IMG/VR virus record: IMGVR_UViG_3300042560_001323
Coordinates: 179,167-243,166 of that record
Reading direction: 5' to 3' (one strand)
DNA: 64,000 nucleotides
The notes under the pieces were generated by a model. The model did no database searches and had not been told where the DNA came from. It was given only the letters and a program-made list of their open reading frames with translations. The number at the start of each line of letters is the position of its first letter. Positions within the stretch are counted from its first letter, which is position 1. Made by a program: the position numbers and the translations under genes. Positions 11,047 to 53,941 of this stretch are shown here, in pieces.

Positions 11047-11110
11047 TTAAAAACTCTAAGCAAGTGTTCACGATAAAATTTGGACTTTTTCTATATTCTT
11101 CTTCTTTTAT
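11039..11110 (-). pseudogene. Putative C-terminal remnant of a Vsr-like/EDxHD free-standing homing endonuclease (IKEEEYRKSPNFIVNTCLEFLNG*)
   Basis: Manual translation; resembles the C-terminal helix of Vsr-like phage endonucleases; overlaps IntC start (AATGGCTAA). Confidence 0.45.
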
Positions 11111-11290
11111 AGTAACAAAAACCAATAAAATTCAAAAACTCTATTGGGTTTCTAGACGCTTCATAGCAGATGCTAAATGATGTGAATCACCATTTAGTCT
11201 TAATTCCGCTCCACGCCAGTAATCGACGTACTCCGCCGATGAAATTTCTTTATCGGTTAGATTCCTCCAACCTTCCTTTAAAATATTAAT
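11110..11290 (-). ncRNA. Predicted omegaRNA/reRNA scaffold overlapping tnpB 3' end and right end (approximate limits)
   Basis: Known TnpB architecture; this segment is conserved in copy 2 and its distal part survives in the deleted copy at 20.9 kb. Confidence 0.5.
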
Positions 11291-12337
11291 AGAGGCATTC
11301 AAATCTCTATCGTGCTGACAACCACAAGAAAGACAAGTCCATTCCCTAACCGAAAGCTGCATCTTGTCTTCTTTATGACCACAGTTAGAACAAGTCTTAC
11401 TGGAAGGAAAGAATCGGTTAATTTTAACCAGGACTTTACCATACCAGTTGCACTTGTATTCCAACATAGAAACAAAAGTAGACCACGCCGCATCGCTAAT
11501 AGACTTCGCTAATTTATGGTTCTTCCGCATTCCAGAAACGTTCAAGTTTTCAAGAACTATCAAGTCAAAAGTGTTCACTAAAGCAGTAGACACATTATGA
11601 AGAAAGTAAGTTCTTGAATTAGTAATGAAATCGTGTACTTTAGCAACTTTAATTCGTTGCTTAATGTAGCGGTTACTACCTTTAGTTTTACGACTTAAAT
11701 GTTTCTGGGCTTTTTTTAGTTTCGCTTGGTTCTTGCGAAACCATTTAGGATTGTTAATGACTTGACCATTACTTAAAACCATCAGGTCTTTAATGCCCAA
11801 ATCAATACCTACTACCTTGCCGGTTGAGGGTATTGGATTGAGTTCTTGTTTTACCAGGATAGAAACAAAATACTTTCCTGTTGGTGTTTTAGAAACCGTG
11901 ATGATCCTGAAATCTGCATCCTCCGGGATTTCACGGTCAATAACAACTTTAATCCAACCAATTTTCTCAAGTCTTACCAGACCGTTTTCTTGGTCTAAAA
12001 CGAACTTTTGATTGGGTAATCTAAAAGACTGCCGATTAGATTTTTTCTTAAAAGAAGGTCTACCTAGTTTGATTTTACGTTTTTTATTGAAAAACTGTTT
12101 CTCAAATTCAATAAAGTCATTTCTTTTCTGTTGAAGGGTAGCGGCAGAAACTTCTTTAAGAAACTCAAATTCAGGAGTGTCTTTTAATGTCTTTTCTGTA
12201 ACTACTTCTTTTGTCTGACTATTGAAGTTCTCAACAAGTTTATTCCAAACAAACCTGCAACAGCCGAAAGTTTTCGCTAATATAACTTCTTGTTCTTTAT
12301 CTGGATAAATCCGAAACTTGTATGCTTTTAAGTGCAT
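11141..12337 (-). CDS. tnpB: RNA-guided endonuclease TnpB, copy 1
   Basis: KAYKFRIYP HTH start; RuvC VGIDLG, VLENL, DRDLNASINI all intact; CxxC...CxxC zinc finger. Confidence 0.95.
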   Translation of the reverse strand: MHLKAYKFRIYPDKEQEVILAKTFGCCRFVWNKLVENFNSQTKEVVTEKTLKDTPEFEFLKEVSAATLQQKRNDFIEFEKQFFNKKRKIKLGRPSFKKKSNRQSFRLPNQKFVLDQENGLVRLEKIGWIKVVIDREIPEDADFRIITVSKTPTGKYFVSILVKQELNPIPSTGKVVGIDLGIKDLMVLSNGQVINNPKWFRKNQAKLKKAQKHLSRKTKGSNRYIKQRIKVAKVHDFITNSRTYFLHNVSTALVNTFDLIVLENLNVSGMRKNHKLAKSISDAAWSTFVSMLEYKCNWYGKVLVKINRFFPSSKTCSNCGHKEDKMQLSVREWTCLSCGCQHDRDLNASINILKEGWRNLTDKEISSAEYVDYWRGAELRLNGDSHHLASAMKRLETQ

Positions 12338-12361
12338 TTGCTCTTTGGTTAGTCGTAATAC

Positions 12362-12369
12362 TATTTATA
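12362..12369 (-). promoter_or_regulatory. T4-type late promoter TATAAATA upstream of tnpB copy 1
   Basis: Exact consensus about 25 nt before ATG; copy 2 has CTAAATA at the equivalent position. Confidence 0.65.
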
Positions 12370-12477
12370 AAACTTAATAGTTTAAGAGGAGGAATAAATC
12401 CTCCTCAACCTGAAAAGCACGACCAACCCAGGCATCTTTATTTAGTGAAGTTTCATTTCACTTTCTCAAACTTTTTC

Positions 12478-12576
12478 TTAAGACTCGGTTTGAACGTGAA
12501 TTGAAAGAGCTTGACCACTCTTAAATTCTTTCCCACAATCAAGACACTTCGGAATCTTTCTCTCTAATTTTGCCAT
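12478..12576 (-). pseudogene. Truncated ORF with C2H2-like zinc finger start (MAKLERKIPKCLDCGKEFKSGQALSIHVQTES*), probable N-terminal remnant of homing endonuclease
   Basis: Manual translation; overlaps the end of IntN in another frame; C-x2-C-x3-F-x5-L-x2-H pattern. Confidence 0.5.
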
Positions 12577-12913
12577 AAAATTCACCCACAGTTATTTCAA
12601 GTATTTCGCCAGTTTTTTTATTTCTGACTCTTACAATTGTATTTATGTCAAAACACTTTCCAACTTGTCTAGGACATAAGACAATATTAAATCTATTTTC
12701 CTGGAACGAAGTCAACATCCTTTCTTGAAAAGGATACATATTAAAATTCTGTAACCCGTGATCGAGGGTTACAATTTTCATATATTTTTTAGAAAAATAA
12801 ACAGAATCTTCGGAACATTTGGCTAGTTCCAAGATTTGCTCTTCTGTCAAATCGACTTTAGTATTCGCTTTTTTTAGAAGCGGATTACCAAGATAGTGCT
12901 GTTCGGGCATCAA
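12539..12913 (-). CDS. gp17: Terminase large subunit gp17, N-terminal 86 aa fused to 38-aa split-intein IntN
   Basis: HYLGNPLLKKAN...MYPFQ...NRFNIVLCPRQVGK then CFDINTIVRVRNKKTGEILEITVGEFY (IntN at 12542-12655). Confidence 0.93.
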   Translation of the reverse strand: MMPEQHYLGNPLLKKANTKVDLTEEQILELAKCSEDSVYFSKKYMKIVTLDHGLQNFNMYPFQERMLTSFQENRFNIVLCPRQVGKCFDINTIVRVRNKKTGEILEITVGEFYGKIREKDSEVS

Positions 12914-12940: not shown

Positions 12941-14314
12941 TTAACATTTCCATCTTCTACGGGCTGCTAGTCCTCTTGGTTTGTTCCAACTTCTTGAACG
13001 ACTGCAGAAATTTTTACGACGCTTCCAGGCTTTACTTCCCTTTTCAACATCTCCGGTTACTGGCGCCTTAAGGTTAGAACCAGTTGCACGATTGTATTTT
13101 TTTCTTCCTTTTGCTGTTAAACCGCCACCCGCTTCCACGGAAAGTTTTTCACCTCTGCCTACAGAAAGGCTAGGGCCAGCCTCTTCGAGATGATCAACTT
13201 CTTCTCCGATTGTTTTATTTTGAAGAAGATAGTTTTTTGACTTTGTATTGGGAAGCTGAATAATTGGCTGACCCACATTCTGGTTACCAACTTTATAACT
13301 TAAAACTCTTGCATCGGGATACACCTTAACAATGGCATCAGTTACTTCCTTCCTATTTGGAATCCGAACTTGGGGGAAGAAGAGTTGGCTGGTCATCATC
13401 TTTCCTCTCCAGGAGAAGAGGATCTGCATTACTTGACCATTCTGAACCGGTAGAGTTGCCTCCGATACTGGAACGCAGTTGGGGACTTCTTTCCCACCTT
13501 TTTTCTTAGTTCCAACCATCTCATAACCTTTCCAGCAGGGGTCTTTGCCTTTCATTTTTCTAGCCTCTTTAAGGCTAGCAGGAAGAACTAAATCAATAAA
13601 CTCAAATTTTGGGTTACCGAAAAGGTCAGTAACAATAGTTGATTCAGTTTGAACTTTCTCTACTTTTTTCAGTTCTGTGTAATAATTCGGTTTTTCTGCA
13701 AGATGTTGAAGTGCAATACCTTCTGCTTCTTCTTTATTGGTGGTATGCTCGCTTTCAACCTTAATGCCCATATTGAGTTGTTTTTGGATTCTCGCGGAAG
13801 ATACGCCGTGCTTGCCTGCAATATCCTCAACACTCATTACTGGCTTTGAGCCTTTTACATATCCTTTTTCCTTTTCTTTTTTATTTTCGGGACAGGGGCA
13901 TTCATCATCTTCGTTAAGTGAATTTAAAATTCTGTCTACGATTGTTGATTCCGTGCTAAATTTTGGTAATACCGATTCTTTTATTTTGTCAGTAATATCT
14001 TTTGTTAATTTACTGGTTGGAATTTTTGATTTTGCTTTGGTCCCAGCAGCAGGCCGTGAATGAGTTTCGGGGTTAATTTCAAACGATGATTCTTCTAACT
14101 CCTTACCAGTATTGAGATACTGTGCAGCATCTGTAGTAAAATCGGCTGCTCTCGTAATTTTAGATTGAATCCAGGCTGGAAGCTGTTGATTTTTACTTTT
14201 AATCTTTTTTCTTAAAATTGCAAGATTGGCTTCAATAGTATCTAATTCAACTGAAGACATATAACCTTCGGTATCATTCTTCATACCAGACTTAGCATTT
14301 TTACTTTTTGGCAT
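12941..14314 (-). CDS. Conserved cyanophage multi-motif protein between gp16 and gp17 (probable head-associated)
   Basis: MGIKVESEHT...ALQHLAEKPNYY, DPCWKGYEMVGTKKKGGKEVPNC and GGLTAKGRKKYN...RRWKC motifs. Confidence 0.7.
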   Translation of the reverse strand: MPKSKNAKSGMKNDTEGYMSSVELDTIEANLAILRKKIKSKNQQLPAWIQSKITRAADFTTDAAQYLNTGKELEESSFEINPETHSRPAAGTKAKSKIPTSKLTKDITDKIKESVLPKFSTESTIVDRILNSLNEDDECPCPENKKEKEKGYVKGSKPVMSVEDIAGKHGVSSARIQKQLNMGIKVESEHTTNKEEAEGIALQHLAEKPNYYTELKKVEKVQTESTIVTDLFGNPKFEFIDLVLPASLKEARKMKGKDPCWKGYEMVGTKKKGGKEVPNCVPVSEATLPVQNGQVMQILFSWRGKMMTSQLFFPQVRIPNRKEVTDAIVKVYPDARVLSYKVGNQNVGQPIIQLPNTKSKNYLLQNKTIGEEVDHLEEAGPSLSVGRGEKLSVEAGGGLTAKGRKKYNRATGSNLKAPVTGDVEKGSKAWKRRKNFCSRSRSWNKPRGLAARRRWKC

Positions 14315-14344
14315 TGAATTAGAAGCACAAGTTCATCTTATTAT

Positions 14345-14779
14345 TTATTCCACGACACCTTTTGGTTGTTGTCTTATAAGTTTTAATGCTTCTGCAGTTG
14401 TTCCAGTGAATACTACATTATTTGTAACAGTTGATGGACCTTTTTGAGATTTTTCTTCATTCATAACCTTCATTTTCTTCTGAAGGTCAATTAACTTGTC
14501 TGCTGCATCTGAAACGCTTTTGATAAGATGACTAACAACCTCATATCCTCTAGGTGTATCAAGTTCTTGGGCTAGGTCTAAGGCATTTGATATAGCCTCT
14601 TGACCCTTTTCAATAATCATATAGTAACTGTCTCTAGAGTATTTGTAATCTCCTTCAACATCTTCGGATACTTTTTGGATTGATTTTGGTTCTTCAACTA
14701 CTACTACTACATCCACATCAACAGGTTCTGCCAGATTGAAAGTTTCGTTTAGTTTACTGAACTTTTTAGGTCTTCCCAT
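14345..14779 (-). CDS. gp16: Terminase small subunit gp16
   Basis: DYKYSR...IEKGQEAI...PRGYEV...KLIDLQKKMK...VTNNVVFTGTT. Confidence 0.92.
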   Translation of the reverse strand: MGRPKKFSKLNETFNLAEPVDVDVVVVVEEPKSIQKVSEDVEGDYKYSRDSYYMIIEKGQEAISNALDLAQELDTPRGYEVVSHLIKSVSDAADKLIDLQKKMKVMNEEKSQKGPSTVTNNVVFTGTTAEALKLIRQQPKGVVE

Positions 14780-14790
14780 AATATCACCCC

Positions 14791-15795
14791 TTAATTTATA
14801 TCAGAATCAAAGCCAAAACTGTCGCCATAAGGAATCAGTGAATTATCAGCTATGGTAATTCGTTTAACATTTGAACCTGAAACGTGTACCATAGCTGTTG
14901 TCCCATCTTGACCTCGTTTGACTTTTAGTTTATTGTTGTCCTTGGAGTCAACTAACATTTCTTCACCATTAATATCTATGTATGAATTTACTGCAATATT
15001 AGTTGCATCTACAACTTCAATTTGTTTATCATTTGCTGAAACTTCTTTTGTTAGGGTAGTTTCAACAATTCCGGTATAATTTTGAATGGCCCTTGGTGTG
15101 CTGCTTGAAACGACATCCCTTATAGGTGAAGTAGAGAGTTCTCCTGCAACAAGACCGATAGAAACTTTTTTAATGATTTGTGAACCAAGTGAACCAGAAG
15201 AGATTGGTCCAAATATATAAGTTTTTACAGTAAACTTTAAAGTATAAATTAGTGCCCGCCTTTCTTTGAAATCTCCCTCAAAATTATCTGTCATAGTAAT
15301 GTTATCAAGAACAATATCAAGGTCCCTTTTTTCGGATATTGAATCTAAAAGTGTCGCACTAATTTTAAGATTGGGTTGAAAATATGGAATAATCTGTTCA
15401 ATAATCTGGAACATATCATCATTGTGTTTTGTCATAATGTTCAACTCAAAGTTGAGATTATAAGGTGCCGGCATACTTACCACCCTTAAGACATTGTTAT
15501 TAATGTCCTTGGCGCAAAAAGAAGTTGCCGTGGTTAATTTTCTTGTTGAATCATAAGATAAACCAATCATTTCAAAAGACATTCTCGGTAATGTAATTTG
15601 AACAGGTTTATTGAGATCGGGAACTTCTCTTAACCGAGCTAAAAATTTTTGGGTTGGAGCATATGCAAGAGGGACTTTACCCTGAAAGAAGACCTCTCCC
15701 TGATCGTTGACTTGCCTAATCATAATATTTTCAAAGAGGCTACCGAAAACTATAACAGCTTTGCGGATGGATTCGTTGTAAAAATATTCAAACAT
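14791..15795 (-). CDS. gp15: Tail terminator / sheath stabiliser gp15
   Basis: MFEYFYNESIRKAVIVFGSLF, VPLAYAPTQKFLARL, ITLPRMSFE. Confidence 0.95.
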   Translation of the reverse strand: MFEYFYNESIRKAVIVFGSLFENIMIRQVNDQGEVFFQGKVPLAYAPTQKFLARLREVPDLNKPVQITLPRMSFEMIGLSYDSTRKLTTATSFCAKDINNNVLRVVSMPAPYNLNFELNIMTKHNDDMFQIIEQIIPYFQPNLKISATLLDSISEKRDLDIVLDNITMTDNFEGDFKERRALIYTLKFTVKTYIFGPISSGSLGSQIIKKVSIGLVAGELSTSPIRDVVSSSTPRAIQNYTGIVETTLTKEVSANDKQIEVVDATNIAVNSYIDINGEEMLVDSKDNNKLKVKRGQDGTTAMVHVSGSNVKRITIADNSLIPYGDSFGFDSDIN

Positions 15796-18170: not shown

Positions 18171-18398
18171 TTATCGGGTTGCATTAAGTAGCTCCAGTAG
18201 TAACGATTTAACTTGATTAATTTCTTCTTTTATTGTATCTAAATTCCTCTCTAAATCTTCAACTTTATTTTGTTCTTTTTGCTTTGCTAACGCCATTGTT
18301 AAATATTCTTCATAACCGCTTTTATTCGTATTTAGTATGGCATTTGTGTTCATATCCCTGATTAAATCTGGGTGACCTTCAATTTTAGATTGCTTCAA
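18171..18398 (-). CDS. Conserved cyanophage hypothetical protein
   Basis: IEGHPDLIRD..TNAILN motif; coiled-coil C-terminus. Confidence 0.75.
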   Translation of the reverse strand: MKQSKIEGHPDLIRDMNTNAILNTNKSGYEEYLTMALAKQKEQNKVEDLERNLDTIKEEINQVKSLLLELLNATR

Positions 18399-20905
18399 AC
18401 TGCTGCTCCCGCAAGTGCGATTACTCTTAGTTCTTTCACTCTTGGTGGATATGCCTGATTGATGGAAGTTCCAACAAGTTTAATACTATAATAACGGAAA
18501 GACGGTAGATTATCTACAGTGAATAAGTATTCCTTAAATTTAACACTATCACCTTCAAATCCGAGAGAATCTTCCTTAATTAATTTAGAATCGGAAAGAC
18601 CACTATTTTGAGAGGGGTCTATAGGTTTGTTGAAACTGTTTAGGTTAGTATAACCGGGAAATGGATAATAAACAAGCTCATCCCCTATTGTATTTGATAC
18701 TGAATAGAGACACTTTATTTCGTTGAAAATATTAACGTGTGCTGATATGTAAATTTTAATAGAATTTGCAGGAAGTTCAAGTTGAATTGGGACATTAGCA
18801 TAAACAAAGGCTGATGGATCGGTAGTTAATTTTGCAACCTTATCATCAATAATAAAATTGGTAATTAAATTGTCAACTCTATTGGTCGTAAAACTTATTG
18901 CAACTCTTTGTAAATCAATTGTTGGCGAGATATAAGAATTTGCTGTATTTAACTGCATATTAAGTGTAAAAGATTTTTTACCAGGAAGAGTAGTCAAGTT
19001 TTGAGTCTCATTAATTTTTGATGCAATAATTCTCGGTGAGTTTAAGTAATTATTTGAATTTAGATTTATTTCAGTAAATCCCGAATCAATATAAGAAAGT
19101 TCGCTTCCACTAATACTCGTTCCAGAGACTGTTCTTATTTTTGAGGAAATGCTCGTGCCCGGTAAAACCGTAGAGTCCACAATTGGTCGCACAATTTCAA
19201 ATGGAATATTTTGAGTTGCCTTAATATTCTCTCCCCCGGATGATTTAGTTTGTTTAAAGTATAATCTACCAAGTGGTGAACCTACGCCACGGCTAGTTTG
19301 TCCCTGAGGCAATGCTGTAATATTACCACCGTTTGTAAAATCAACCCTAACTTTGTAATAATCTAGGCCAATTGAATTATTCTCAGTTGAATCGCTAAGA
19401 GTAAATGTTTTGTTTATTCGTCTTAGTGATACACCATTTATCTCATACTTCATTACTGGAGTTAATGCAGAATAAGAACTCGCTAAAGTTTGGTCAATTT
19501 GCCTGGTGATTCCCGTTAATGTATTTCCCGAAACTCCATTATATGCAATAATTTCATTCCCTATCTTTACATAACCAGGATTTGTTATTGCAACACCGAT
19601 GTTTTCAAATGTTGAAAAATTAGTTGCATCTTGAATGCTAATGTTTCCAGTTGTGTTATTTGAATATGCAGTGGTTAGTTTGGATGGACTAATATCGCTA
19701 GAAGCATTATTTATAATAACTCTGTTTACATTAGAGTGCATTCCGTGGTTTCTGTGATTAATTTTGATGTGTTCTCCATTTTCATTTACAACTATGCTAC
19801 TTGGATATGCTTTTATGCCAGATGAAAAATAGATATCGCTAGTTATCCCAGAATTATTAACATAAGTTAAAGTTTTGGCAGAGAGGGCTTCTTCAAAATC
19901 TCCTTGAACGTTATCAACGATAAGCTCATTAATACCTGCAATATTTTGAACCGAAAGTTGCATATTTAATCCTAAATTCGAGGCCCCTATTTGAGTTGGA
20001 ACTAGGACATCACCAATAAGATAGCCGTTACCACCAGCCGTAATAGTAGCGCCAGCCGATGCTACTGAGCCATTAGTTATTGTAATGCTTGCCGTTGCAT
20101 TTCTGCCGCTTCCTGTCTTTGAGGTAAGTGCAATATTATTATAAGTGATTGAACCTGAAAATGGAGTATAACCTATACCAGCATTAACGATACCGAGAGT
20201 TCCAGTAGCAGAGCCAGCATAACCCACATAATTCCCGCTTCCCGATGCATTGAGTTGGGTAATATCGTTTCCAAATGTCAAATTTGAGGTTAAAATAGTA
20301 GCACCCAATCCAATTTTAATCTTTCTGGCGTTCATTTCAAGAGGATTGCTAATTAAATTTGCAACTTGATTATTGCCTTCTGTTAAATCTGGATTGTAAA
20401 AATTAATGTCTCCCTGAGAAGCCTTAAAGTTAGCGCGATAGAGAGTGAACTTTAAATCATCACTCTGCACTGGAGTCCAAGTTGAACCATTCTGTGATTT
20501 AAATACTGAACCAGATAATGGTTGTTTTGTTACAAAAACCCCGCTAGTTGAACTAGAGGTTAAATCCATTTCAGTTAATCTTGAAATGTGGACTAAATAT
20601 TGGTCTGAATTAGAAAGGATGCAAACGCAATGAAATGTATCACCCTTCAGAAAAACCGGAGATTCAAATGTAACCCTTGTTGCTAGAGTTCCATTATTTG
20701 ATGTTGAAATAATTTCTGGTCTTAAAACTACTTCAGAATGTCGGTAAACTGAATCTGTTGGCAATCCATATTCCATTGGGCGGAGTTGAACCGTTACCGG
20801 AAGCTCTGGATCTTTACTATAAAAGAATAAATCCAATGATGTTACAAAATAACCGCTAGTGGGTGCAACATAAAAAGACTGGGCAATTGGATCTACTAAC
20901 TTCAT
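18395..20905 (-). CDS. Virion structural protein, C-terminal part of the DUF4815-type giant protein
   Basis: DPIAQSF, SVFKSQNGSTWT..Q.DDLKFTLYRA.F, PPRVKELRVIALA motifs. Confidence 0.75.
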   Translation of the reverse strand: MKLVDPIAQSFYVAPTSGYFVTSLDLFFYSKDPELPVTVQLRPMEYGLPTDSVYRHSEVVLRPEIISTSNNGTLATRVTFESPVFLKGDTFHCVCILSNSDQYLVHISRLTEMDLTSSSTSGVFVTKQPLSGSVFKSQNGSTWTPVQSDDLKFTLYRANFKASQGDINFYNPDLTEGNNQVANLISNPLEMNARKIKIGLGATILTSNLTFGNDITQLNASGSGNYVGYAGSATGTLGIVNAGIGYTPFSGSITYNNIALTSKTGSGRNATASITITNGSVASAGATITAGGNGYLIGDVLVPTQIGASNLGLNMQLSVQNIAGINELIVDNVQGDFEEALSAKTLTYVNNSGITSDIYFSSGIKAYPSSIVVNENGEHIKINHRNHGMHSNVNRVIINNASSDISPSKLTTAYSNNTTGNISIQDATNFSTFENIGVAITNPGYVKIGNEIIAYNGVSGNTLTGITRQIDQTLASSYSALTPVMKYEINGVSLRRINKTFTLSDSTENNSIGLDYYKVRVDFTNGGNITALPQGQTSRGVGSPLGRLYFKQTKSSGGENIKATQNIPFEIVRPIVDSTVLPGTSISSKIRTVSGTSISGSELSYIDSGFTEINLNSNNYLNSPRIIASKINETQNLTTLPGKKSFTLNMQLNTANSYISPTIDLQRVAISFTTNRVDNLITNFIIDDKVAKLTTDPSAFVYANVPIQLELPANSIKIYISAHVNIFNEIKCLYSVSNTIGDELVYYPFPGYTNLNSFNKPIDPSQNSGLSDSKLIKEDSLGFEGDSVKFKEYLFTVDNLPSFRYYSIKLVGTSINQAYPPRVKELRVIALAGAAV

Positions 20906-20931
20906 CTATCTTATTATTCTAACGAACTATT

Positions 20932-21038
20932 TAGTAACAAAAACCAATAAAAATAAAACTCTATTGATTTTCTAGACGCTTCATAGAAGATGCTAAGTGG
21001 TGAAAGTCAATATTTTAAGAGAAATAATAAATCCTCTT
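20932..21038 (-). mobile_element. Internally deleted (MITE-like) derivative of the TnpB element
   Basis: GAGGATTTATT..CTCTTAAA.TATT (upstream leader piece) fused to CACCACTTAGCATCTTCTATGAAGCGTCTAGAAAATCAATAGAG...TTTTATTGGTTTTTGTTACTA (tnpB 3' end + right end). Confidence 0.8.
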
Positions 21039-24000
21039 AACTACTCCAATAGGTAGGATTCCCCTCGTAAAGTTTTTTAGCTATTGCATTTATTCTTTGA
21101 AGTTCAGAAACTGTATTTATTCTTCTAAGGCCAATGGCATCCATTAACACCCCAACTGTGAATGAAGTCCCATTTTTAGAATTTATACTGTTAACCAAAC
21201 TTTGTCCCTCGTCTGACGTAGTGACGCTTCTTCCATTAACTACAATATCACCATCTTGCCAGGGGCGAGAAACTTGAGTTTGCATGGGTTCTGGTGCCGG
21301 TGCAATTACGTCTGGTATAGCTACTTCGGGTGCTGGGGTAGATTGAACCTGTGTAGACACTTCGGGTGCTGGGGTAGATTGAACCGGTGTAGGTTCTGGC
21401 GGCGGGGGAGGAGTTTGTGGAGGCTCAACTCTAACGATATTCTCTTCAATAGAATTAAGTCTACCAGAAGAGTAATACTTTTCCTCTGCGAAGGATGTTG
21501 CAGCGCCTTCAACTAATGAATTTGTAGGACTATTAGTTAATCTAAAGACTCTAATTCCACTTTCAAAAGATGGATTCTGTTGAATATTACGGTTTGGAAT
21601 AAACAATGAACCTATAATATCGCCGGAATTGTCCGCTATCAGCTTAATATCCGAACTTATAGTGGCTTCCGCTCCGGTTGTTTGGCCCTTTATGGTCATA
21701 CCGCTTTCAATATAACCACTAAAACCACCTTGAACCATATTAGCTAAACTATAAGTGTCAACATTAATGATAGTAGATGTTGATGAATAATTTTCTGAAA
21801 TTATTGTATCTGGATAATATGGATTAGTGGAATACGTTACGGATGGAGAATCATATTGACCATATTTATGGTTACTTTTTGCAACTCTAAATTTAATTTC
21901 CGCACCGGTTGTGATGTTTGACCCAATTACTGTCTCGCCAATTTGGAACGTTCCGCTGGTCATTTGAATTTGAATAAGTTTAGGTACGATAAATTTATCC
22001 ATTGCTCTTCCATCAAAATAAGAATACAATCTAGAAAGAGGTTTCATTCTCTTAGCAGTAAATTCAATATTTCTGGAACGAAGATACGGAATAATTTCAC
22101 TTTTAATAAGTGTATTCCCCTTTTCCCAAATACTAGATACAGAATTCCATAAAACGGGATTAAATCCAAGTTGCTGGTCAAAACTAACTGCTGCAAGTTG
22201 AGAAATTGTAGGTGAATAGTTTGCAGCTGAAACTGTTTTAGTGGATACTGTTACTTGATCTGCCCACACATCCGAGGATGGGTAAACTATTATAGTTCCA
22301 CTAAATGTATTATTCCTATAAGAAGCAACATTATCAACTCTAGTTGAATACGGTTGGCTAAATGCAACAACTTCGTCATAATCTAATGTTAAAAGTTGAC
22401 CAGTTTTCTTGACATTAGAGCCAATTAAATCTGCGATATATCTTAGGTCAATACGACTATCTGCAACTGTTCCAATACCTGCAATAGAGTTTGTTGAAAT
22501 AACAAGATCGAGTGCGGTTGTGTAGTGGCTGGGCCGGAGTTCACCTGTATCTAAATCAACACTATTCTTAACTTCGGTAGTTTTAAGTTGGGATATAGTA
22601 TTAGAGAAATTGTCAACAAAGAAACCAGATTTAAAGCGGTTTAGACCGGAGCTATCTGGAATGAAAAGATTAGAGGTATGATTCTCTAGCAGTGTCAATG
22701 AGGTATAATATTCAAGATTTAAAATCCTATCTTCAAGATTTTTAATATCATTCATTCTATATCTTTTATTGGTTGCCAATTGAATGTCGGCATCTTCTGG
22801 AGCACAGAGATAGGCTGGGAGATAAATTGTAGCGATTTCCAAAGAATCTTCAATTTGATTGGGTGGCTGAGGTAACTCTGCTGGTGCCCCAGAAGAAAGT
22901 TGAAGTTGGCCGGTTTTAGATAAAAATATCTTATCAATTCTTGGTAAATAGAACGAGTAGTCTAAAATAATAGATTCATCTGATGCTAGAATGTTCTTAA
23001 TATTGGCAGAATTATTTGAAAAATCTCTACCTAAAAATTCAAAAGGAGACCTGGAGTTAACATTCACAACATTACGCGAAACTCTGGGGCGAGCATCAAT
23101 GATATCTGAGACAGAAATTCCATCAACTTTCGGTAAATCGCAGTAATCAAAGTTTGAATACGAGTTAACAGTTACAATATCTCCATCATCGGAAGTAAGA
23201 TAATCAGCCGATTCAAATACTACACTTAACTCTCTTGTCGGCTCTTTTGCATTTGTTTTTCTGACTAATTTTGAATAATCATAAATTGATGATTTTTGTC
23301 CAGGTTCAAATGTAAAGTTTGAAGTTATATTTGAATCGCCAAAATCCAAAGAAACAACATTTGCCGTAACACCAGTATCTTTAAATGTAAGGGTTTCGTT
23401 TACAGTAAAAGTAGAAGAATTTAGATAAACAAAGTTAATACTCAAATCGTTTACACTTTTAACATAAATTGCAACTGCCTTGGAATTTGAACCAATTATT
23501 GTTTCCCCGACTAACAAATCTCCTGTTTTGTTTGTTGGACCACTAATAGATGATAGAGTTAATCTAGGCAAAGATGGTGGAGTTACAGTAGATGACTCAA
23601 ATACTCCATAAATTTTTGTAACATCGGGCTCGAGAAGACAAATATCTATATCTTGAACTCTAGAACCATATGGGTAGTTTCCGTAAATTAGGCCATCGTT
23701 TAGTGTGGTATTTCCAATACCCGAGGCAATATATTTTGACTTGTCAATTGTAATTGTTTTTACTCTATTTTTATATTTAACTTTTTCCTTTACGTTAATT
23801 TTTCTAAGAGTTACAATAAGTTTTGCTTTAGAATTACTGCCGAGACCACTTATTGTAATAGTTGATGAACCACTTCCGTATGTAAATTTATCGGAAGTTA
23901 GAGTCTCGGTTATTCCATCTTCACGAATAAGGACATATCTTTCTTCATCAAATGGTAAGAAAGTTTCATTGGTATCTGATAAAATTGGGCCAACGGCATT

Positions 24001-26127
24001 TGATGAAATAATAACATCAAACTGCTTTCTTATGATAAGATTAGAACCCAATAGATTAACGTTATTTACATTCTCTTTTGGTAACTCCGTGTAAAGGGTA
24101 TTATCTTGTGATTTTGTTAATTGTGAAGACAGTAAAGTAAAATCTGAAGGATTAATCACAATAGAAGGCAATTTACCTTCACAAATACCGCTAACAGTTG
24201 TTACACCAGCTAATGTTAATGTTTTAGAACCAACGGTTTCAACCCTGGCATAATTGCTTGTTGAAATTCCTGGGGTAGTAAACGCGACCAGATTTCCAAC
24301 TTTAACGCTGCCAATAAATGAATTGTTTGTTCTAGTTACTGTTGATATGCCGGTTGATTGGTCAAATGCCGTGATATTTACTTGGCCAATTTGAGTTGAA
24401 GGGTACTGTTTAACATCTGCAGTAAAAGTATAAGCTGTACCTACTATTCCATATACAGCCTTTACATCATTTAAGGAATATGCTGTTACTGCCGTTGTTA
24501 CCCTTGTATTTTCAATACCGTTGAAAATAAGTTTTTCCCCGGTTGCAAATGTTCCACGAATATCGTATGCCGTAACAATGCCACTATTTCTTGAATCGTA
24601 ACGTATGAACCCAGATGCCCCACTAGATTTGCCGACAATTTGGCACGGAACATTATACTGAATGTCACTGTCTAGACTTTGATTTAATGTTAATTCTGTG
24701 TAGGATTGCACGTCAAAAAGCGAAATATCCCATTCATTTAGATTAGGATTATTCGTGGTATATGACCCAGATTCTAATGCAAAGTCATAAACCCTCGCCA
24801 GACCGATCTCTTTTCCTGGTGCAGATAGTTGAGAATTGCCTACTCTTGAATCTCTAAGACTTAAAGTATAATTTGTGCCAATTCCAATTACAGGCGTTCC
24901 ATAAACTCTGTTTAGGGTAAGAGTTGAACCGGTATAATAAATAATCTCTTGACCTTCAAGAAGTTTGGTGGTTCTAGGTTTTTTAAAATCAATAAATCTG
25001 GGGCTTGCGGTTTTCGCTTCGTAACCTTGAACGTATGCCTTTAGTGGGGAAACTTGATAAATGCCTAAACTATCACTTGGAGTATTGCCATCGTAAGTTA
25101 CTTCTCCTGCACCATAAACGCCATTATTACCAATAAGATTATTTAAAGATTCGCTAATTGATACAACTGGGGAATTGACGTAATAGTTTCCAGATTCATC
25201 AAATGTTCTTTTTGCAAACTCTTGCTCTAAAATATTGTAATTTACTACATCCTGATTTGAGATTAAAACCCCTTTTCTAATTTCTAAAAGTTGAACAAAG
25301 TTGCTAGGTTTCTCTTCTTCTGCAGCATATTTTGTTAGAATTAATTGAATGGAAAATCTATCAGCACCTGGAGCGGTATAGTTTGGGAAACCGCTAGCGT
25401 TATCAACAAGTTCAATCTTATCATCAGAAGTAACAATGGTTTCGGAAACAAAAAACCCCACCTTATAAGATGAAATATTCGAGTATTGGTCTAAGAGTAA
25501 TGTTTGTTTGTAAACGTTTACAAATGTTCCTCTAATAAAGTAAACTCCGTCAGAAATCGTTACAGATGATGCAACGGAATTACAATTGCTGGGAATAGTT
25601 ACAGCAATTGTTTCTCCAGCAGTAAAAACGACAATTTCACCTGTAGAGAGAGTTTCGGTTGAAGATGCCTCTAAGATGAGTTCTTCACCATCAGAAAATA
25701 ATTCTTCTAAACCGGTTGAAGTGTCTGAACTAATATATTTAATGTAAAGAGATGCATTACCTCTTTCTGACTCCTTTTGAGTTTGAAATAGAATTACGGT
25801 TGCCCTAATGTTGCTTCTTTTGCCTCTGATTGTTTTGCCAACTAATAGCGGAATATAAGTAGATACACTGGTTCCATTGTATGAGTTTTGTAGTTCTATT
25901 GCTTGAAGATCGTTATCATAATCAATATTGCCCGGAATTACTACTGACCCTTCTTTAAAAATATGATTACCAAATTGCTCAACTTGATTTTGAAGAATTG
26001 ATTGCAGGTTATTTAGTTCTCTACCTTGAACTGGATTTGATGGTTTAAATAATACGCGATAATAATTATCAACGGTATTAAAATCGTCATTATATGGAGT
26101 GATATTGAGATTTGTTTCCTGCGGCAT
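21037..26127 (-). CDS. Virion structural protein, DUF4815-type, N-terminal part
   Basis: MPQETNLNITPYNDDF..YYRVLFKP..VQGRELN.LQS.LQ.Q, RFKSGFFVDNF; Pro-rich tail with a 36-bp-period duplication at 21323-21385. Confidence 0.85.
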   Translation of the reverse strand: MPQETNLNITPYNDDFNTVDNYYRVLFKPSNPVQGRELNNLQSILQNQVEQFGNHIFKEGSVVIPGNIDYDNDLQAIELQNSYNGTSVSTYIPLLVGKTIRGKRSNIRATVILFQTQKESERGNASLYIKYISSDTSTGLEELFSDGEELILEASSTETLSTGEIVVFTAGETIAVTIPSNCNSVASSVTISDGVYFIRGTFVNVYKQTLLLDQYSNISSYKVGFFVSETIVTSDDKIELVDNASGFPNYTAPGADRFSIQLILTKYAAEEEKPSNFVQLLEIRKGVLISNQDVVNYNILEQEFAKRTFDESGNYYVNSPVVSISESLNNLIGNNGVYGAGEVTYDGNTPSDSLGIYQVSPLKAYVQGYEAKTASPRFIDFKKPRTTKLLEGQEIIYYTGSTLTLNRVYGTPVIGIGTNYTLSLRDSRVGNSQLSAPGKEIGLARVYDFALESGSYTTNNPNLNEWDISLFDVQSYTELTLNQSLDSDIQYNVPCQIVGKSSGASGFIRYDSRNSGIVTAYDIRGTFATGEKLIFNGIENTRVTTAVTAYSLNDVKAVYGIVGTAYTFTADVKQYPSTQIGQVNITAFDQSTGISTVTRTNNSFIGSVKVGNLVAFTTPGISTSNYARVETVGSKTLTLAGVTTVSGICEGKLPSIVINPSDFTLLSSQLTKSQDNTLYTELPKENVNNVNLLGSNLIIRKQFDVIISSNAVGPILSDTNETFLPFDEERYVLIREDGITETLTSDKFTYGSGSSTITISGLGSNSKAKLIVTLRKINVKEKVKYKNRVKTITIDKSKYIASGIGNTTLNDGLIYGNYPYGSRVQDIDICLLEPDVTKIYGVFESSTVTPPSLPRLTLSSISGPTNKTGDLLVGETIIGSNSKAVAIYVKSVNDLSINFVYLNSSTFTVNETLTFKDTGVTANVVSLDFGDSNITSNFTFEPGQKSSIYDYSKLVRKTNAKEPTRELSVVFESADYLTSDDGDIVTVNSYSNFDYCDLPKVDGISVSDIIDARPRVSRNVVNVNSRSPFEFLGRDFSNNSANIKNILASDESIILDYSFYLPRIDKIFLSKTGQLQLSSGAPAELPQPPNQIEDSLEIATIYLPAYLCAPEDADIQLATNKRYRMNDIKNLEDRILNLEYYTSLTLLENHTSNLFIPDSSGLNRFKSGFFVDNFSNTISQLKTTEVKNSVDLDTGELRPSHYTTALDLVISTNSIAGIGTVADSRIDLRYIADLIGSNVKKTGQLLTLDYDEVVAFSQPYSTRVDNVASYRNNTFSGTIIVYPSSDVWADQVTVSTKTVSAANYSPTISQLAAVSFDQQLGFNPVLWNSVSSIWEKGNTLIKSEIIPYLRSRNIEFTAKRMKPLSRLYSYFDGRAMDKFIVPKLIQIQMTSGTFQIGETVIGSNITTGAEIKFRVAKSNHKYGQYDSPSVTYSTNPYYPDTIISENYSSTSTIINVDTYSLANMVQGGFSGYIESGMTIKGQTTGAEATISSDIKLIADNSGDIIGSLFIPNRNIQQNPSFESGIRVFRLTNSPTNSLVEGAATSFAEEKYYSSGRLNSIEENIVRVEPPQTPPPPPEPTPVQSTPAPEVSTQVQSTPAPEVAIPDVIAPAPEPMQTQVSRPWQDGDIVVNGRSVTTSDEGQSLVNSINSKNGTSFTVGVLMDAIGLRRINTVSELQRINAIAKKLYEGNPTYWSS

Positions 26128-26133: not shown

Positions 26134-27681
26134 TTAGAACTGCAAAATTACCTTGATGTCTTCTTTTTGATTAGTAGACCTAGTGAAAGACGGTCTATTA
26201 TCAATATGAATAATGTCCCCGGAATATTTCTTTACTTCTGAATTGGATAGTCCATTTGTAAAATATTGACCTAGATAACTATTATTTATTGGGTTATAAT
26301 CTCCATTAAAAGACGAGTCAATTGGAACAGTGTTGCTACCACAAATTAGATTTAAAGAACCTCCTGTTGAAGGGGAGGAGGTAAAACGATTTAGTTTAAA
26401 CCCATAAGTGGGTGAACCATTTTGAGTTCCATTAGTATTAAACCCAACAAGTGAACGATCTTGCCAATATTTAAGCACATTATTCGTATAATCAAATGAT
26501 GCTACTCTACCAACTGCTGTAATACCTGCTCCTACTGTCTGGGTAAATCTAGAATCTGCTGGAAAAGACGCTGCGGTTAGATTAGTCCCCGTTACCTTAA
26601 TAGCATAAAGAGCACTGGCTTTATCTACATTCAATCTAGATGTTGAGCCATAAGTTTGTGGGTTCTTTACAATACCAACTCTTGCGGTTTGATTGCCGAC
26701 AATGAAATCTGGATTTAAGGTGTCATTTTCAAATCTGGAATATAAAATAGCCTTCGTTGCACCGAGTTCTCTATAAATGTCATAACCGTGCCCACCCTTC
26801 GGTGGAATTATTACATTAAAAATTGGAGTAGTAGAACCTGTTGGGACACCGCCTGCAACCAAATCGACAGTCCCGTATGTATAACCAGAACCACCTTTTG
26901 TTATAATAATAGAATCAACTTGTGCATCATTATTTACAACAATTGTTGCTTCTGCATCGCTCCCATCCCCATTAATCGGGACTTTAGTGTAAGTGGTATT
27001 TGGTGAACCTATTGAAAAGCCCCGATTTACTACAGTAATAATTTTTAATTGGCCGCTATTTGATGCATTATTGCGAATGGAAGTATATTCTGAATTTGTT
27101 TCCCAATCAGAAGGAACTGGAATATAATTTGTTGAGTCAAATTTAATAATATCACTCGGCTTGATGGTATAGAGATATTTCCAAATATAACCATCACCAC
27201 TCTCACCAGCTTTTCTCGGCTCCAAATCCGTAAAAGTTGGCTCATTTAAAGATGGCTGCCCTCTTGGATTTTCTGGGTCAGTGCCATTAAAAAGACAGAT
27301 ATAAACTTTATAATCTTGGTTTACGACAAAATAATTTGAGGAATATAGACTAGTTGCCCCGGAAGGTTTTGATGTATTACTTCTAGTAATATCGTGCCGG
27401 TACATATCATAAGTTGTACCCGAAGTCCAAGCTGTTTTTTTAATAATTTGTTTAGCATTGGCAATGGTTACCTTTTTCAGTGCAATCATTGTATCCCAAT
27501 AATCGTTTTCTTGGTCAAAACTATCCTTAGGTGCCGGCGGCGCGGTATCCCAATCTGTTTGATAATCTGAGGCGTTCGGTAGTCCAATAAAAGTATAATA
27601 GGTATCCGTGCCAGTCGTAACAGTTTCAACAAACTTTTTAGCCTGAAAAATTCTAATTTGGTCGGTAATTATGGCTGACAT
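26134..27681 (-). CDS. gp8: Baseplate wedge subunit gp8
   Basis: MSAIITDQIR, DGYIWKYLYTI, SGDIIHIDNR..TRS.NQKEDIKVILQF. Confidence 0.92.
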   Translation of the reverse strand: MSAIITDQIRIFQAKKFVETVTTGTDTYYTFIGLPNASDYQTDWDTAPPAPKDSFDQENDYWDTMIALKKVTIANAKQIIKKTAWTSGTTYDMYRHDITRSNTSKPSGATSLYSSNYFVVNQDYKVYICLFNGTDPENPRGQPSLNEPTFTDLEPRKAGESGDGYIWKYLYTIKPSDIIKFDSTNYIPVPSDWETNSEYTSIRNNASNSGQLKIITVVNRGFSIGSPNTTYTKVPINGDGSDAEATIVVNNDAQVDSIIITKGGSGYTYGTVDLVAGGVPTGSTTPIFNVIIPPKGGHGYDIYRELGATKAILYSRFENDTLNPDFIVGNQTARVGIVKNPQTYGSTSRLNVDKASALYAIKVTGTNLTAASFPADSRFTQTVGAGITAVGRVASFDYTNNVLKYWQDRSLVGFNTNGTQNGSPTYGFKLNRFTSSPSTGGSLNLICGSNTVPIDSSFNGDYNPINNSYLGQYFTNGLSNSEVKKYSGDIIHIDNRPSFTRSTNQKEDIKVILQF

Positions 27682-41605: not shown

Positions 41606-42943
41606 TAGTAACAAAAACCAATAAAAGTAAACCTCTATTGATTTCCTAAACGCTTCACAGCAGATGCTAAAGGGTGAAAATCACCGCTCAGTCTTAATTC
41701 CGCTCCACGCCAGTAATCGACGTACTCCGCCGATGAAAGTTCTTTATCGGTTAGGCTGCGCCAACCTTCCTTTAAAATATTAATAGAGGCATTCAAGTCT
41801 CTATCGTGTTTTGAACCGCAAGACGGACAAGTCCATTCCCGAATTTTTAAAGGCATCTTGTCTTCCTTATGTCCACAAGAACTACAAGTCTTACTGGAAG
41901 GAAAGAATCGGTTAATTTTAACCAGGACTTTGCCATACCAATCACACTTATACTCTAACATAGTAACAAAAGTAGACCAAGAGGCATCCGAGATTGATTT
42001 GGACAACTTGTGATTCTTCAACATCCCAGAAACATTCAAGTCTTCAACCGAAATTACATCAAAAGTTCTAACCAGAGCTGTTGAGATGTTATGGAGAAAG
42101 TAAGTTCTGGAATTGGTAATGTATTCGTGTATTCTAGCAACTTTAATACGTTGCTTAATGTAACGATTACTGCCTTTAGTCTTGCGACTTAAATGCTTCT
42201 GGGCTCTTTTGAGTTTCGCTTGGTTCTTGCGAAACCATTTAGGATTGTTAATGGCTTGACCGTTTGAAAGAATGAACAAGTCTTTAATACCCAAATCAAT
42301 ACCTACTACCTTGCCGGTAGAGGGTATTGGATTGAGTTCTTGCTTAACCAGAATAGAAACGAAGTATTTACCGGTTGGAGTTTTAGAAACCGTGATGATC
42401 CTGAAATCTGCATCCTCCGGGATTTCACGGTCAATAACAACTTTAACCCAACCAATTTTCTCCAGTCTAACCACTGAATTTTCTTGGTCTAACTTGAACT
42501 TTTGATTGGGAAGTCTAAAAGACTGACGATTTGATTTCTTCTTAAAAGAAGGCCGTCCTAATTTGGCCTTTCTTTTCTTATTGAAAAACTGTTTCTTGAA
42601 CTCAATAAAGTCATTTCTTTTTTGTTGAAGTGTAGAAGCTGAAACTTCTTTAAGAAACTCAAATTCTGGAGTGTCTTTTAATGTCTTTTCGTTAATAAAT
42701 TCCTTAGAGTTACTGTTGAAGTTTTCAACGAGTTTATTCCAAACAAACCTGCAACAACCGAAAGTCTTCGCCAGTAAAACTTCTTGCTCTTTATCTGGAT
42801 AAATCCTGAACTTGTATGCTTTTAAGTGCATCTGCTCTGATTATTGGTTGGCAATACTATTTAGTAAAGTTTTATTTTATAAGGGGAGAAGAAATTCTCC
42901 CCACCTGAAAAGCGCCAACCAACCAGGCATCTTTATTTAGTGA
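41606..42943 (-). mobile_element. TnpB-only element, copy 2 (about 1.34 kb)
   Basis: Shares both end sequences with copy 1; no tnpA adjacent. Confidence 0.85.
41635..42831 (-). CDS. tnpB: RNA-guided endonuclease TnpB, copy 2
   Basis: Same length (398 aa) as copy 1, about 47 substitutions by hand count (about 88% identity); RuvC D/E/D intact. Confidence 0.95.
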   Translation of the reverse strand: MHLKAYKFRIYPDKEQEVLLAKTFGCCRFVWNKLVENFNSNSKEFINEKTLKDTPEFEFLKEVSASTLQQKRNDFIEFKKQFFNKKRKAKLGRPSFKKKSNRQSFRLPNQKFKLDQENSVVRLEKIGWVKVVIDREIPEDADFRIITVSKTPTGKYFVSILVKQELNPIPSTGKVVGIDLGIKDLFILSNGQAINNPKWFRKNQAKLKRAQKHLSRKTKGSNRYIKQRIKVARIHEYITNSRTYFLHNISTALVRTFDVISVEDLNVSGMLKNHKLSKSISDASWSTFVTMLEYKCDWYGKVLVKINRFFPSSKTCSSCGHKEDKMPLKIREWTCPSCGSKHDRDLNASINILKEGWRSLTDKELSSAEYVDYWRGAELRLSGDFHPLASAVKRLGNQ

Positions 42944-42968
42944 TGTTTTTACTGCCATTTTTTACTCC

Positions 42969-48086: not shown

Positions 48087-48562
48087 TCAACCAATAGTTG
48101 GGGCTTTTAGAGCAATTTCTTGAGTAGAAACTGCAGCCAAATCTACACTTGACCCATAAGTTTACCATTCTTATGGAGTGGACTATATCATCACCCTTTA
48201 AGGTGTCGGACGCTTATTCCTGTTATTAAGGGAACTATATCCCCCAGGTAGTCTCTGAAGTTTCCTTGAGTGTACTCAAGGCTCACCTGCTGATTGCCCA
48301 TGTTTTTGGGGGGGGGGGTTCCAGCAATTCACCCAGTTTCGTCAATACTCTTACGAGTAAGGGACACCGATTAAAACTTAATGTCCACGGGAGGTGCTGC
48401 AATAAATGCTAAAATAAAGCAAATAGTAGCAGCAAGTAAACAGGGAATCATAAGAACCGAAAAATGCCCAAGATAGAGGCGATTATTCGTACTTGTTACC
48501 CAATTAAGATAACGTTCCCAGAGGTTGTCGCCAGAACGGCGTGTAGCAATTGTAGCAGTCAT
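48087..48562 (-). pseudogene. psbA: psbA remnant: exon 1 (48381-48562, D1 residues 1-60) + group I intron + extreme C-terminal exon (48087-48145); central about 280 codons missing
   Basis: [53 protein letters not shown]; DLAAVSTQEIALKAPTIG* matches the D1 C-terminus. Confidence 0.9.
48146..48380 (-). mobile_element. ORF-less group I intron (235 nt)
   Basis: P AATTGCTGGAA, Q AATCAGCAG, R TTCAGAGACTA, S GATATAGTCC; IGS GTGTCC pairs with exon GGACAT (U-G at splice site); P9 hairpin; P9.0 AC/GT and terminal G at 48146. Confidence 0.88.
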
Positions 48563-48631
48563 ATTTGAAAATAGGGTAGAAAAAGTTCGTAGGGACGAAC
48601 GTGTTTATTATTTCTTCTCACCCCTAGAGAA

Positions 48632-48684
48632 GATATGAGAGACGTATTTGACGTGCAAAGTCTCGGTAAGCACGAGCAGCAATG
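48632..48684 (-). repeat. psbA leader motif (PhotoRC-II-like), copy 1 of a 53-bp direct repeat
   Basis: CATTGCTGCTCGTGCTTACCGAGACTTTGCACGTCAAATACGTCTCTCATATC; 1 mismatch to 49200-49252. Confidence 0.75.
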
Positions 48685-48710
48685 AAGTTTATGTTATTAT
48701 TTTGTAATAA

Positions 48711-53452: not shown

Positions 53453-53556
53453 TGTTTGCACCGGCAACCTGCCGGGGCTGAACTACCCTGTAAGAATACA
53501 GCATCCACAACCGGAACGGTCGGAATAACCGATAAGCATTGCTAATGGTTGAGGAC

Positions 53557-53700
53557 TTGACAGGCTGGGCTGGTTCTGTTATTATAGTTTCATACAAGGA
53601 AACCAGCGCAAGAAGCGCATCATATAAGCGGCCACAATAAACCTGCTCGTTAATAACACTATAAAAAGTATAAAGAAAAGGCCCGCAATCGCGGGCCTGT
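53557..53700 (+). ncRNA. Repeat module A: sigma70 promoter + conserved structured segment + terminator
   Basis: TTGACA-17-TATTAT, GCGC-AAGAA-GCGC hairpin, GGCCACAATAAACCTG, AGGCCCGC-AATC-GCGGGCCT. Confidence 0.6.
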
Positions 53701-53716
53701 AGGGTATGCTGGCAGA

Positions 53717-53851: not shown

Positions 53852-53941
53852 GGGAGGAATCCTAAACTGCTCCGCCATCCTACAACATCGGCGGCCAGAT
53901 CAGCCGGATTGAACGATCAGAATTGCTGATCGTTCCAGGGC

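What the first reader, a model, noticed from the sequence alone, without database searches (positions are those of the whole stretch)
20906..21038. Miniature TnpB derivative at the break of the giant DUF4815 virion gene
Seen: the 130-bp gap between the 1696-aa and 836-aa ORFs holds a left-leader fragment fused to the last tnpB codons and right end. Its junction reads GTTACTAAATAG, creating a CTAAATA late promoter in front of the second ORF. Known: cyanophage homologues usually encode both parts (MPQ.TNLN... and DPLAQSF...) as one polypeptide. Inference: element insertion split an essential virion gene, was then trimmed, and now supplies a promoter and possibly an orphan guide-RNA stub.
Basis: partly seen in the sequence, partly recalled or inferred. 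Interest (0 to 1): 0.65.

Follow-up and report, generated by a model that had tools for sequence, protein, structure and literature searches.

The report
Decayed TnpB scar between virion genes
The 131-base gap between two large tail genes of a freshwater cyanophage does hold a broken piece of a TnpB mobile element. The piece landed in a gene boundary that already existed, so it neither split the gene nor created its promoter, and it is an ordinary scar.

Summary

**What is there**
- The gap 20906-21036 (- strand) carries a 34-nt left-end hairpin piece (82% identity).
- This piece is fused to the last 78 nt of a tnpB element: about 14 codons plus the right end, 85-92% identical to nine other copies in this 243-kb phage genome.
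- Distant cyanophages (S-SCSM1, S-SM2, Sf-FS3) do encode both parts as one 2510-2603-aa protein.

**Why the split is older than the insertion**
- Every closer relative found is split at exactly the same place. These are 13 contigs at 68-80% identity, one of them a complete 248-kb genome with no TnpB at all.
- In those relatives the spacer is only 23-29 nt, reads TAAATAG...ATG, and holds no element sequence.
- In a tree, the window and its sister L019 sit deep inside all-split clades.

**The promoter is native**
- The window keeps the whole native 28-nt spacer directly after the right end.
- TAAATA and its 22-nt distance to the ATG are therefore native. Only the C of CTAAATA comes from the element; relatives have A there.
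- Both (A/C)TAAATA forms are about 12-fold enriched upstream of genes in this genome.

**State of the remnant**
- It lacks the left terminus.
- It keeps 17 of 43 predicted guide-RNA scaffold pairs.
- It replaced the conserved ORF A end AGK* with YEGNPTYWSS*.

It is most likely an immobile scar.

The parts
21037..26127 (-). ORF A, 1696 aa. It is the DUF4815 N-terminal part of the VrlC-like giant virion protein and lies directly downstream of a gp8-like gene.
   Evidence: DUF4815, E 1.6e-54; gp8 next door. (aligns to residues 1 to about 1650 of the fused homologues).
21037..21069 (-). Non-native last 10 codons plus the stop of ORF A (YEGNPTYWSS*). They replace the conserved native end AGK*/AGR*. 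Their origin is unknown.
   Evidence: relatives end ...RRLAGK* or AGR*. (no significant similarity to the left end or to anything else in the genome).
21003..21036 (-). Left-end hairpin fragment of a tnpB element, corresponding to positions 158-191 of the reference element. The 43 nt of the left terminus are absent.
   Evidence: 82% identity over 34 nt, E 6e-4 and 5e-5. (forms a 9-bp hairpin that includes the ORF A stop codon).
20932..21009 (-). Last 78 nt of a tnpB element: about 14 terminal tnpB codons (stop TAG at 20961-20963) plus the right end, which finishes ...GTTACT(A).
   Evidence: 85-92% identity to nine copies. (only the terminal hairpin, 17 of 43 consensus pairs, is retained).
20906..20933 (-). 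Complete native 28-nt intergenic spacer. It holds the former ORF A stop TAA (20931-20933). The late-promoter-like motif CTAAATA lies at 20928-20934, 22 nt before the ATG; only its C (20934) comes from the element.
   Evidence: aligned with the spacers of 13 relatives. (motif enrichment and spacing).
18395..20905 (-). ORF B, 836 aa. It is the C-terminal part of the VrlC-like virion protein and starts MKLVDPIAQSF.
   Evidence: aligns to the last ~820 residues of the fused homologues. (residues 2-163 match residues 789-946 of a solved DUF4815 protein).
11110..12453 (-). Full tnpB element El1 (tnpB 11141-12337, 398 aa). It served as a reference copy for the ends.
41606..42945 (-). Full tnpB element El2 (tnpB 41635-42831, 398 aa). 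It served as a reference copy for the ends.

Best explanation
The VrlC-like giant virion gene was already two separate genes in the ancestor of this freshwater cyanomyovirus clade. They were separated by a ~25-nt spacer whose first bases (stop TAA + ATAG) form a T4-type late-promoter motif 21-22 nt before the ORF B start.

Later, in the lineage of this phage, an ISDra2-like TnpB element landed at the very end of ORF A, immediately upstream of that spacer. It then decayed. It lost its left terminus, almost all of tnpB and the 5' two-thirds of the guide-RNA scaffold region. What remains is a 34-nt left-end hairpin piece joined to the last 78 nt.

Shown effects:
- ORF A lost its conserved last three codons and now ends in ten foreign codons.
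- The gap grew from about 25 to 131 nt.
- The base before TAAATA changed from A to C.

Inferred:
- ORF B still uses its own native promoter.
- The remnant can no longer move, because it has no left terminus and the genome has no TnpA.
- It has no function of its own.
For: - All relatives with at least 55% identity in the ORF B N-terminus are split, and all below about 51% are fused except one unrelated split group.
- Thirteen contigs have a 23-29-nt spacer TAAATAG...ATG with no element sequence. Spacer lengths differ modulo 3, so there is no read-through fusion.
- In the tree, window+L019 (100/98) is nested in all-split clades of 8 (99/88), 11 (100/100) and 17 rows (99/87). The one row of the 17 labelled fused, L031, has no upstream sequence to judge.
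- The complete 247,932-bp relative G004 is split and has no TnpB match.
- The window's 28 nt after GTTAC align along their whole length with the native spacers.
- ATAAATA and CTAAATA occur 24 and 23 times in the 52-nt windows upstream of ORF starts, against about 2 expected. GTAAATA and TTAAATA are not enriched. Distances to the ATG cluster at 20-27 nt; ORF B is at 22 nt, and the relatives are at 21-22 nt.
- The published cyanomyovirus late-promoter motif is NATAAATA (PMC2984593).
- The remnant keeps 17 of 43 consensus pairs.
- The genome has no Y1 or serine TnpA.
Against: - No transcript data exist, because no RNA run holds this phage. Promoter use and the absence of a small RNA are therefore inferred.
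- The sister phage L019 also carries element sequence in the same spacer. This could mean that the site is targeted or that the insert is kept for a reason.
- The same remnant is present in a second lake sample, so it is at least stably inherited.
- The origin of the 33 nt that now end ORF A is unexplained.
Confidence: 0.8

Rival explanations
1. One reading: insertion of the TnpB element into a single giant gene split it. The element was then trimmed, and its junction now provides the promoter for the second half.
For: More distant cyanophages have one fused gene of 2510-2603 aa. The remnant lies exactly at the break.
Against: - Thirteen closer relatives with no remnant are split at the same codon.
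- A complete TnpB-free genome is also split.
- The element-bearing pair is nested deep inside all-split clades.
- The window still holds the complete native spacer beside the remnant, including the old stop codon and the TAAATAG motif at the native spacing.
- Precise excision would restore a fused gene, not a conserved spacer with its own ATG.
Confidence: 0.03
2. The remnant is an exapted, shortened guide RNA. It would be transcribed with the adjoining spacer as guide and loaded onto TnpB made by the four full copies. It would then direct cutting of the remnant-free allele of this spacer in co-infecting relatives, either as homing or as competition between phages.
For: - The four full TnpB copies are ISDra2-like with the catalytic motifs present.
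- The right end, terminal hairpin and flank are intact.
- A sister phage has a different mini-element in the same spacer, which suggests a site that is hit repeatedly.
Against: - 26 of 43 predicted scaffold pairs have lost their 5' arm, including the first hairpin and both long-range stems, which show covariation in the intact copies.
- No promoter motif lies upstream inside the remnant.
- The TAM could not be defined from the left flanks.
- There are no RNA data.
Confidence: 0.07
3. The remnant is kept because its hairpins act on RNA. They could work as a terminator, a processing site or a stabiliser that uncouples ORF A and ORF B transcripts.
For: The gap folds into two hairpins, z = -2.2 against shuffles. 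The second is followed by a U-rich run. The remnant is present in two lake samples.
Against: The stems are AT-rich, and the simple terminator scan finds none on the - strand in the gap. Relatives manage with 25 nt and no such structure. The z-score is modest, and the structure is inherited from the element.
Confidence: 0.1

Closest known systems
ISDra2-type TnpB / omega-RNA elements of the IS200/IS605 family
   Same: The full copies in this genome encode a 398-aa TnpB that matches solved ISDra2 TnpB at E 1e-70, with the HTH, OrfB_IS605 and zinc-ribbon domains. The 3' end of the gene plus the right end forms conserved hairpins with covariation. The gap carries the last 78 nt of this.
   Different: The gap copy has no tnpB, no left terminus and only the terminal hairpin. 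The genome has no TnpA of either type.
Miniature non-autonomous derivatives of IS200/IS605 elements (MITE/PATE-like)
   Same: It is an internally deleted left end joined to a right end. A true family of this kind exists here: genome copies at 112493 and 92833, and the one in relative L019, share one deletion junction.
   Different: The gap remnant has a unique deletion junction. It keeps a left-end part that the mini family lacks, and it lacks the left terminus that the mini family keeps. It is a fossil, not a mobile miniature.
VrlC / DUF4815 giant virion proteins of T4-like cyanophages (S-SM2 VrlC 2519 aa, S-SCSM1 2603 aa)
   Same: It has the same position after gp8 and the same two blocks, and 44-46% identity over both parts.
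   Different: It is encoded as two genes. ORF A has an extra ~90-aa tail after the proline-rich linker, shared across most of the freshwater split clade (L027 ends differently).
T4-type late promoter (TATAAATA; NATAAATA in cyanomyoviruses; CTAAATA in Aeromonas phage Aeh1)
   Same: (A/C)TAAATA is about 12-fold enriched 20-27 nt before ORF starts in this genome, and the ORF B site fits.
   Different: The start site was not measured. The motif here is native to the spacer, not made by the element.

Membership tests
IS200/IS605-family TnpB element (intact) | tnpB open reading frame | tested here: not met
   Only about 14 terminal codons remain in the gap.
IS200/IS605-family TnpB element (intact) | Right end identical in register with other copies | tested here: met
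   78 nt at 85-92% identity, ending ...TTGGTTTTTGTTACTA as in all ten other copies (nine in this genome and the mini in L019).
IS200/IS605-family TnpB element (intact) | Left terminus next to the target motif | tested here: not met
   Left-end positions 115-157 are absent. The 33 nt in their place show no significant similarity, p 0.1-0.97.
IS200/IS605-family TnpB element (intact) | TnpA transposase available in the genome | tested here: not met
   No Y1_Tnp or Resolvase match in the 243-kb genome.
Functional omega (guide) RNA | Complete scaffold upstream of the guide | tested here: not met
   17 of 43 consensus pairs are retained. The first hairpin and the long-range stems are lost. No Rfam family matches in the window.
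Functional omega (guide) RNA | Transcribed and bound by TnpB | not testable with these tools
   No RNA run holds this phage.
Mobile miniature (MITE/PATE-like) derivative | Both termini present and the deletion junction shared with other copies | tested here: not met
   The junction is unique and the left terminus is missing. The true mini family has a different junction.
Gene fission caused by a mobile-element insertion | Nearest element-free relatives carry the unsplit gene | tested here: not met
   All 13 nearest element-free relatives are split at the same codon.
T4-type late promoter | Motif at the typical distance before the ATG, and enriched genome-wide | tested here: met
   CTAAATA lies 22 nt before the ATG. 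Counts upstream of ORFs are 23 and 24 against about 2 expected.
T4-type late promoter | Transcript start a few bases downstream of the motif, late in infection | not testable with these tools
   No RNA data.

The most novel reading that the evidence does not exclude
This short spacer may be a recurrent landing site for TnpB elements, since two sister phages carry two structurally different derivatives in it. The surviving right end plus native spacer may still act as a minimal guide RNA that lets the phage's TnpB cut the empty allele in co-infecting relatives. TnpB would then act as a homing or competition weapon between cyanophages.
Probability: 0.08. Interest if true: 0.6.

Novelty: new member of a known kind. 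Interest (0 to 1): 0.3.

Why it matters
It shows that the striking picture of a mobile element sitting at the break of an essential giant gene is a coincidence of position, not a cause. The fission of this virion gene is an old trait of the whole clade, at a natural domain boundary.

The useful residue is contextual. This is a freshwater T4-like cyanophage heavily colonised by TnpB-only elements: four full copies, one truncated copy and five fragments, with no TnpA. These elements sit in intergenic spacers next to late promoters without breaking them. That makes it a good natural system for asking how TnpB elements persist and move in lytic phage genomes.

Tried and rejected
- A megablast of the region against GenBank phages found nothing, because the closest records are withheld or absent.
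- Rfam has no family matching the element's RNA in the window.
- I looked for the origin of the 33 nt that now end ORF A. There was no second copy in the genome and no significant similarity to any left end in global or local alignments with shuffles, p 0.1-0.97.
- I tried to define the element's ends and TAM from an empty site of El1 in relatives. This failed because El1 lies inside an intein that the relatives lack altogether.
- Left flanks of full copies share AAAC(T/A)T(C/G)A(C/A) before TAAATAAAG, but the minis do not, so no TAM could be fixed.
- I searched for population variants lacking the remnant. No joints were seen in contigs of four lake samples. Contigs drop rare variants, so this is not evidence of absence.
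- No RNA runs were available.
- The sigma-70 and terminator scans of the gap gave nothing above the shuffles on the relevant strand.
- A paper search for DUF4815 gave no functional information.

Full report
**Setting.** The window is the last 64 kb of a 243,166-bp viral record with direct terminal repeats. It comes from lake-water metagenomes. The gene order on the - strand is typical of a T4-like cyanomyovirus:
- a gp8-like gene at 26134-27681;
- ORF A at 21037-26127 (1696 aa, DUF4815, E 1.6e-54);
- a 131-nt gap;
- ORF B at 18395-20905 (836 aa).

**The observation.**
- Two full tnpB genes lie in the window, at 11141-12337 and 41635-42831. Both are 398 aa with the HTH_OrfB_IS605, OrfB_IS605 and Cas12f1-like_TNB domains.
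- A repeat search groups gap bases 20932-21009 with the 3' ends of both elements (family D8).
- Genome-wide, gap positions 28-105 match nine other copies at 85-92% identity (E 1e-21 to 1e-24). Gap positions 1-34 match the left-end hairpin of two full copies at 82% (E 6e-4).
- Against the four full elements, the gap holds reference positions 158-191 (left-end hairpin) joined to 1374-1451, the last 78 nt.
- The retained codons read ...FHHLASSMKRLENQ*, and the right end finishes ...TTGGTTTTTGTTACTA as in every other copy.
- Contigs from the source sample cover both junctions. An independent lake sample has a contig spanning 20676-20996 with one mismatch.

**Fused homologues exist, but only at a distance.**
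- By tblastn, ORF B matches the C-terminal third of VrlC / DUF4815 proteins of marine cyanophages.
- In S-SCSM1, S-SM2 and Sf-FS3 this is one gene of 2603, 2519 and 2510 aa directly after gp8.
- ORF A aligns to residues 1 to about 1650 of these proteins and ORF B to the remainder.
- The conserved DPLAQSF block follows a variable, low-complexity linker. The window's break lies in that linker. ORF A also carries about 90 extra residues after a proline-rich stretch.

**The decisive test: closer relatives.** I scanned IMG/VR and JGI metagenome contigs with ORF B and with an alignment of its first 300 residues. This returned about 160 loci.
- For each locus I asked whether the frame is open upstream of the DPIAQSF block. 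Every locus with at least 55% identity whose upstream sequence could be read has a stop within 0-8 codons. Almost every locus below 51% is open for more than 500 codons. The exception is one separate group at about 37-40% that is split independently.
- Thirteen contigs (L020-L029, L037, L098, L099; 68-80% identity) have the same layout: an ORF A that ends ...RRLAGK* or ...AGR* (one, L027, ends differently), then a 23-29-nt spacer reading TAAATAG..., then ATG and MK(L/I)xDPIAQ(S/T)F. None holds any element sequence.
- Spacer lengths differ modulo 3, so the two genes are not joined by read-through.
- A maximum-likelihood tree of 112 rows puts window+L019 together (100/98). That pair sits inside all-split clades of 8 (99/88), 11 (100/100) and 17 rows (99/87). 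The single row of the 17 labelled fused has no upstream sequence to judge.
- G004 is a complete 247,932-bp genome of this clade. It is split and has no TnpB match at all.

**Where the remnant sits.** A DNA alignment of the junctions shows that the window's 28 nt after ...GTTAC (20933-20906) align along their whole length with the native spacers, old stop codon TAA included. The element-derived 112 nt, plus 33 nt of unknown origin, lie between the codon for Leu (CTT) and that old stop. As a result, ORF A lost the conserved AGK and now ends YEGNPTYWSS*. I could not trace those 33 nt to the left end or to anything else in the genome.

**The promoter claim.**
- In this genome ATAAATA and CTAAATA occur 24 and 23 times in the 52 nt before ORF starts, against about 2 expected. 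GTAAATA and TTAAATA occur 1 and 4 times.
- Distances to the ATG cluster at 20-27 nt.
- ORF B's CTAAATA lies 22 nt before the ATG. The relatives' ATAAATA lies 21-22 nt before theirs.
- The published cyanomyovirus late motif is NATAAATA (PMC2984593). CTAAATA was described for Aeh1 (PMC1524935).
- So six of the seven motif bases and the spacing are native. The element only changed the first base from A to C, both of which this phage uses. The junction preserved a promoter-like site and did not create one.

**The guide-RNA stub.**
- I aligned the last 135 nt of nine genomic copies and the L019 copy. The consensus fold has 43 pairs: a first hairpin, two long-range stems, a central hairpin and a terminal hairpin.
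- Seven pairs change on both sides.
- The gap retains 17 pairs, essentially only the terminal hairpin.
- TnpB itself looks active. It matches ISDra2 TnpB at E 1e-70 and has the GIDLG, ENLN and HDRD motifs.
- The genome has neither a Y1 nor a serine TnpA.
- With no left terminus the remnant cannot be excised. With a third of the scaffold it is unlikely to load TnpB, though this was not tested.

**The sister phage.** L019 (L004) is 90% identical in ORF B. In the same spacer it has a larger mini-element of about 190 nt.
- Its internal deletion junction is the same as in two mini copies of the window's genome, at 112493 and 92833. It therefore belongs to a miniature family that has spread.
- The window's remnant keeps a left-end part that this family lacks.
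- The flanks also differ. L019 keeps the native ORF A end and has lost the native spacer. The window does the reverse.
- Two independent hits on one 25-nt spacer seem more likely than one ancestral insertion, but replacement by recombination between copies cannot be excluded.
- In L019 the right end is followed by a 20-nt near-copy of ORF B codons 5-11, two bases different, both at synonymous sites. This is unexplained.

**Verdict.** The remnant is a real but ordinary fossil of an ISDra2-like TnpB element in a pre-existing intergenic spacer. It did not split the gene and did not create the promoter. The remaining open points are whether the stub makes any RNA and whether this spacer is a preferred target.

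Noticed in passing
window 9280-12913 (- strand): The full tnpB element El1 lies between two halves of the large terminase gene. A relative has one uninterrupted 560-aa TerL reading ...RQVGK|STAVV.... In the window, the upstream ORF ends ...RQVGK|CFDINT...* and the downstream ORF starts MAKFIE... and reads ...IVSHN|STAVV.... That looks like an intein in the Walker A loop, broken into a short N piece (about 38 aa) and a long C piece (about 113 aa). From memory this resembles atypical split inteins of the AceL-TerL kind. Terminase_6N starts only at residue 116 of the 588-aa ORF.
   Followed up: partly
whole genome G000 (window = 179167-243166): The phage carries four full tnpB genes, one 5'-truncated copy (14199-14945) and five short remnants (63043, 92833, 112493, 129511 and the gap). 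It has no TnpA of either type.
   Followed up: yes
genome 92833 and 112493; L004 3805-3985: Three mini-elements share one deletion junction (...TTTTCGGGTAT|CGGTGGAG...), so a miniature derivative has spread within and between phages. The copy at 92833 is followed by a ~55-nt near-duplicate of the 3' coding end of the gene upstream of it.
   Followed up: partly
L004 3978-3999 versus 4013-4033: In the sister phage the right end is followed by a 20-nt near-copy of ORF B codons 5-11 (PIAQSF). It is out of frame, differs at two synonymous positions and lies just before the real ATG. The native promoter motif is absent there.
   Followed up: no
L030-L035, L100-L102 (e.g. L032 1228-1476): In the marine sister clade the A/B boundary holds a ~275-nt gap with an 82-aa ORF that matches Peptidase_S74, the self-cleaving chaperone of endosialidase (E 4e-9). 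The start of the domain appears to lie at the end of ORF A in another frame. So the boundary is a natural module junction.
   Followed up: partly
window 48154-48390 and 48600-48687 (- strand): Rfam finds a group I intron (66 bits) and a PhotoRC-II RNA (53 bits). A 53-nt repeat at 48632 and 49200 flanks this area.
   Followed up: no
window 53528-59672: Four to five copies of a 70-75-nt repeat contain TTGACA...TATTAT-like boxes and a GC-rich hairpin. They are spaced 1.3-1.9 kb apart and look like repeated early promoters or leaders (families D5, D7, D10).
   Followed up: no
window 60875-61234 and 63441-63588: There is a 20-nt tandem array of about 13 or more units, and a 12-nt GC-rich tandem array inside an ORF that looks collagen-like (families D1, D2).
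   Followed up: no
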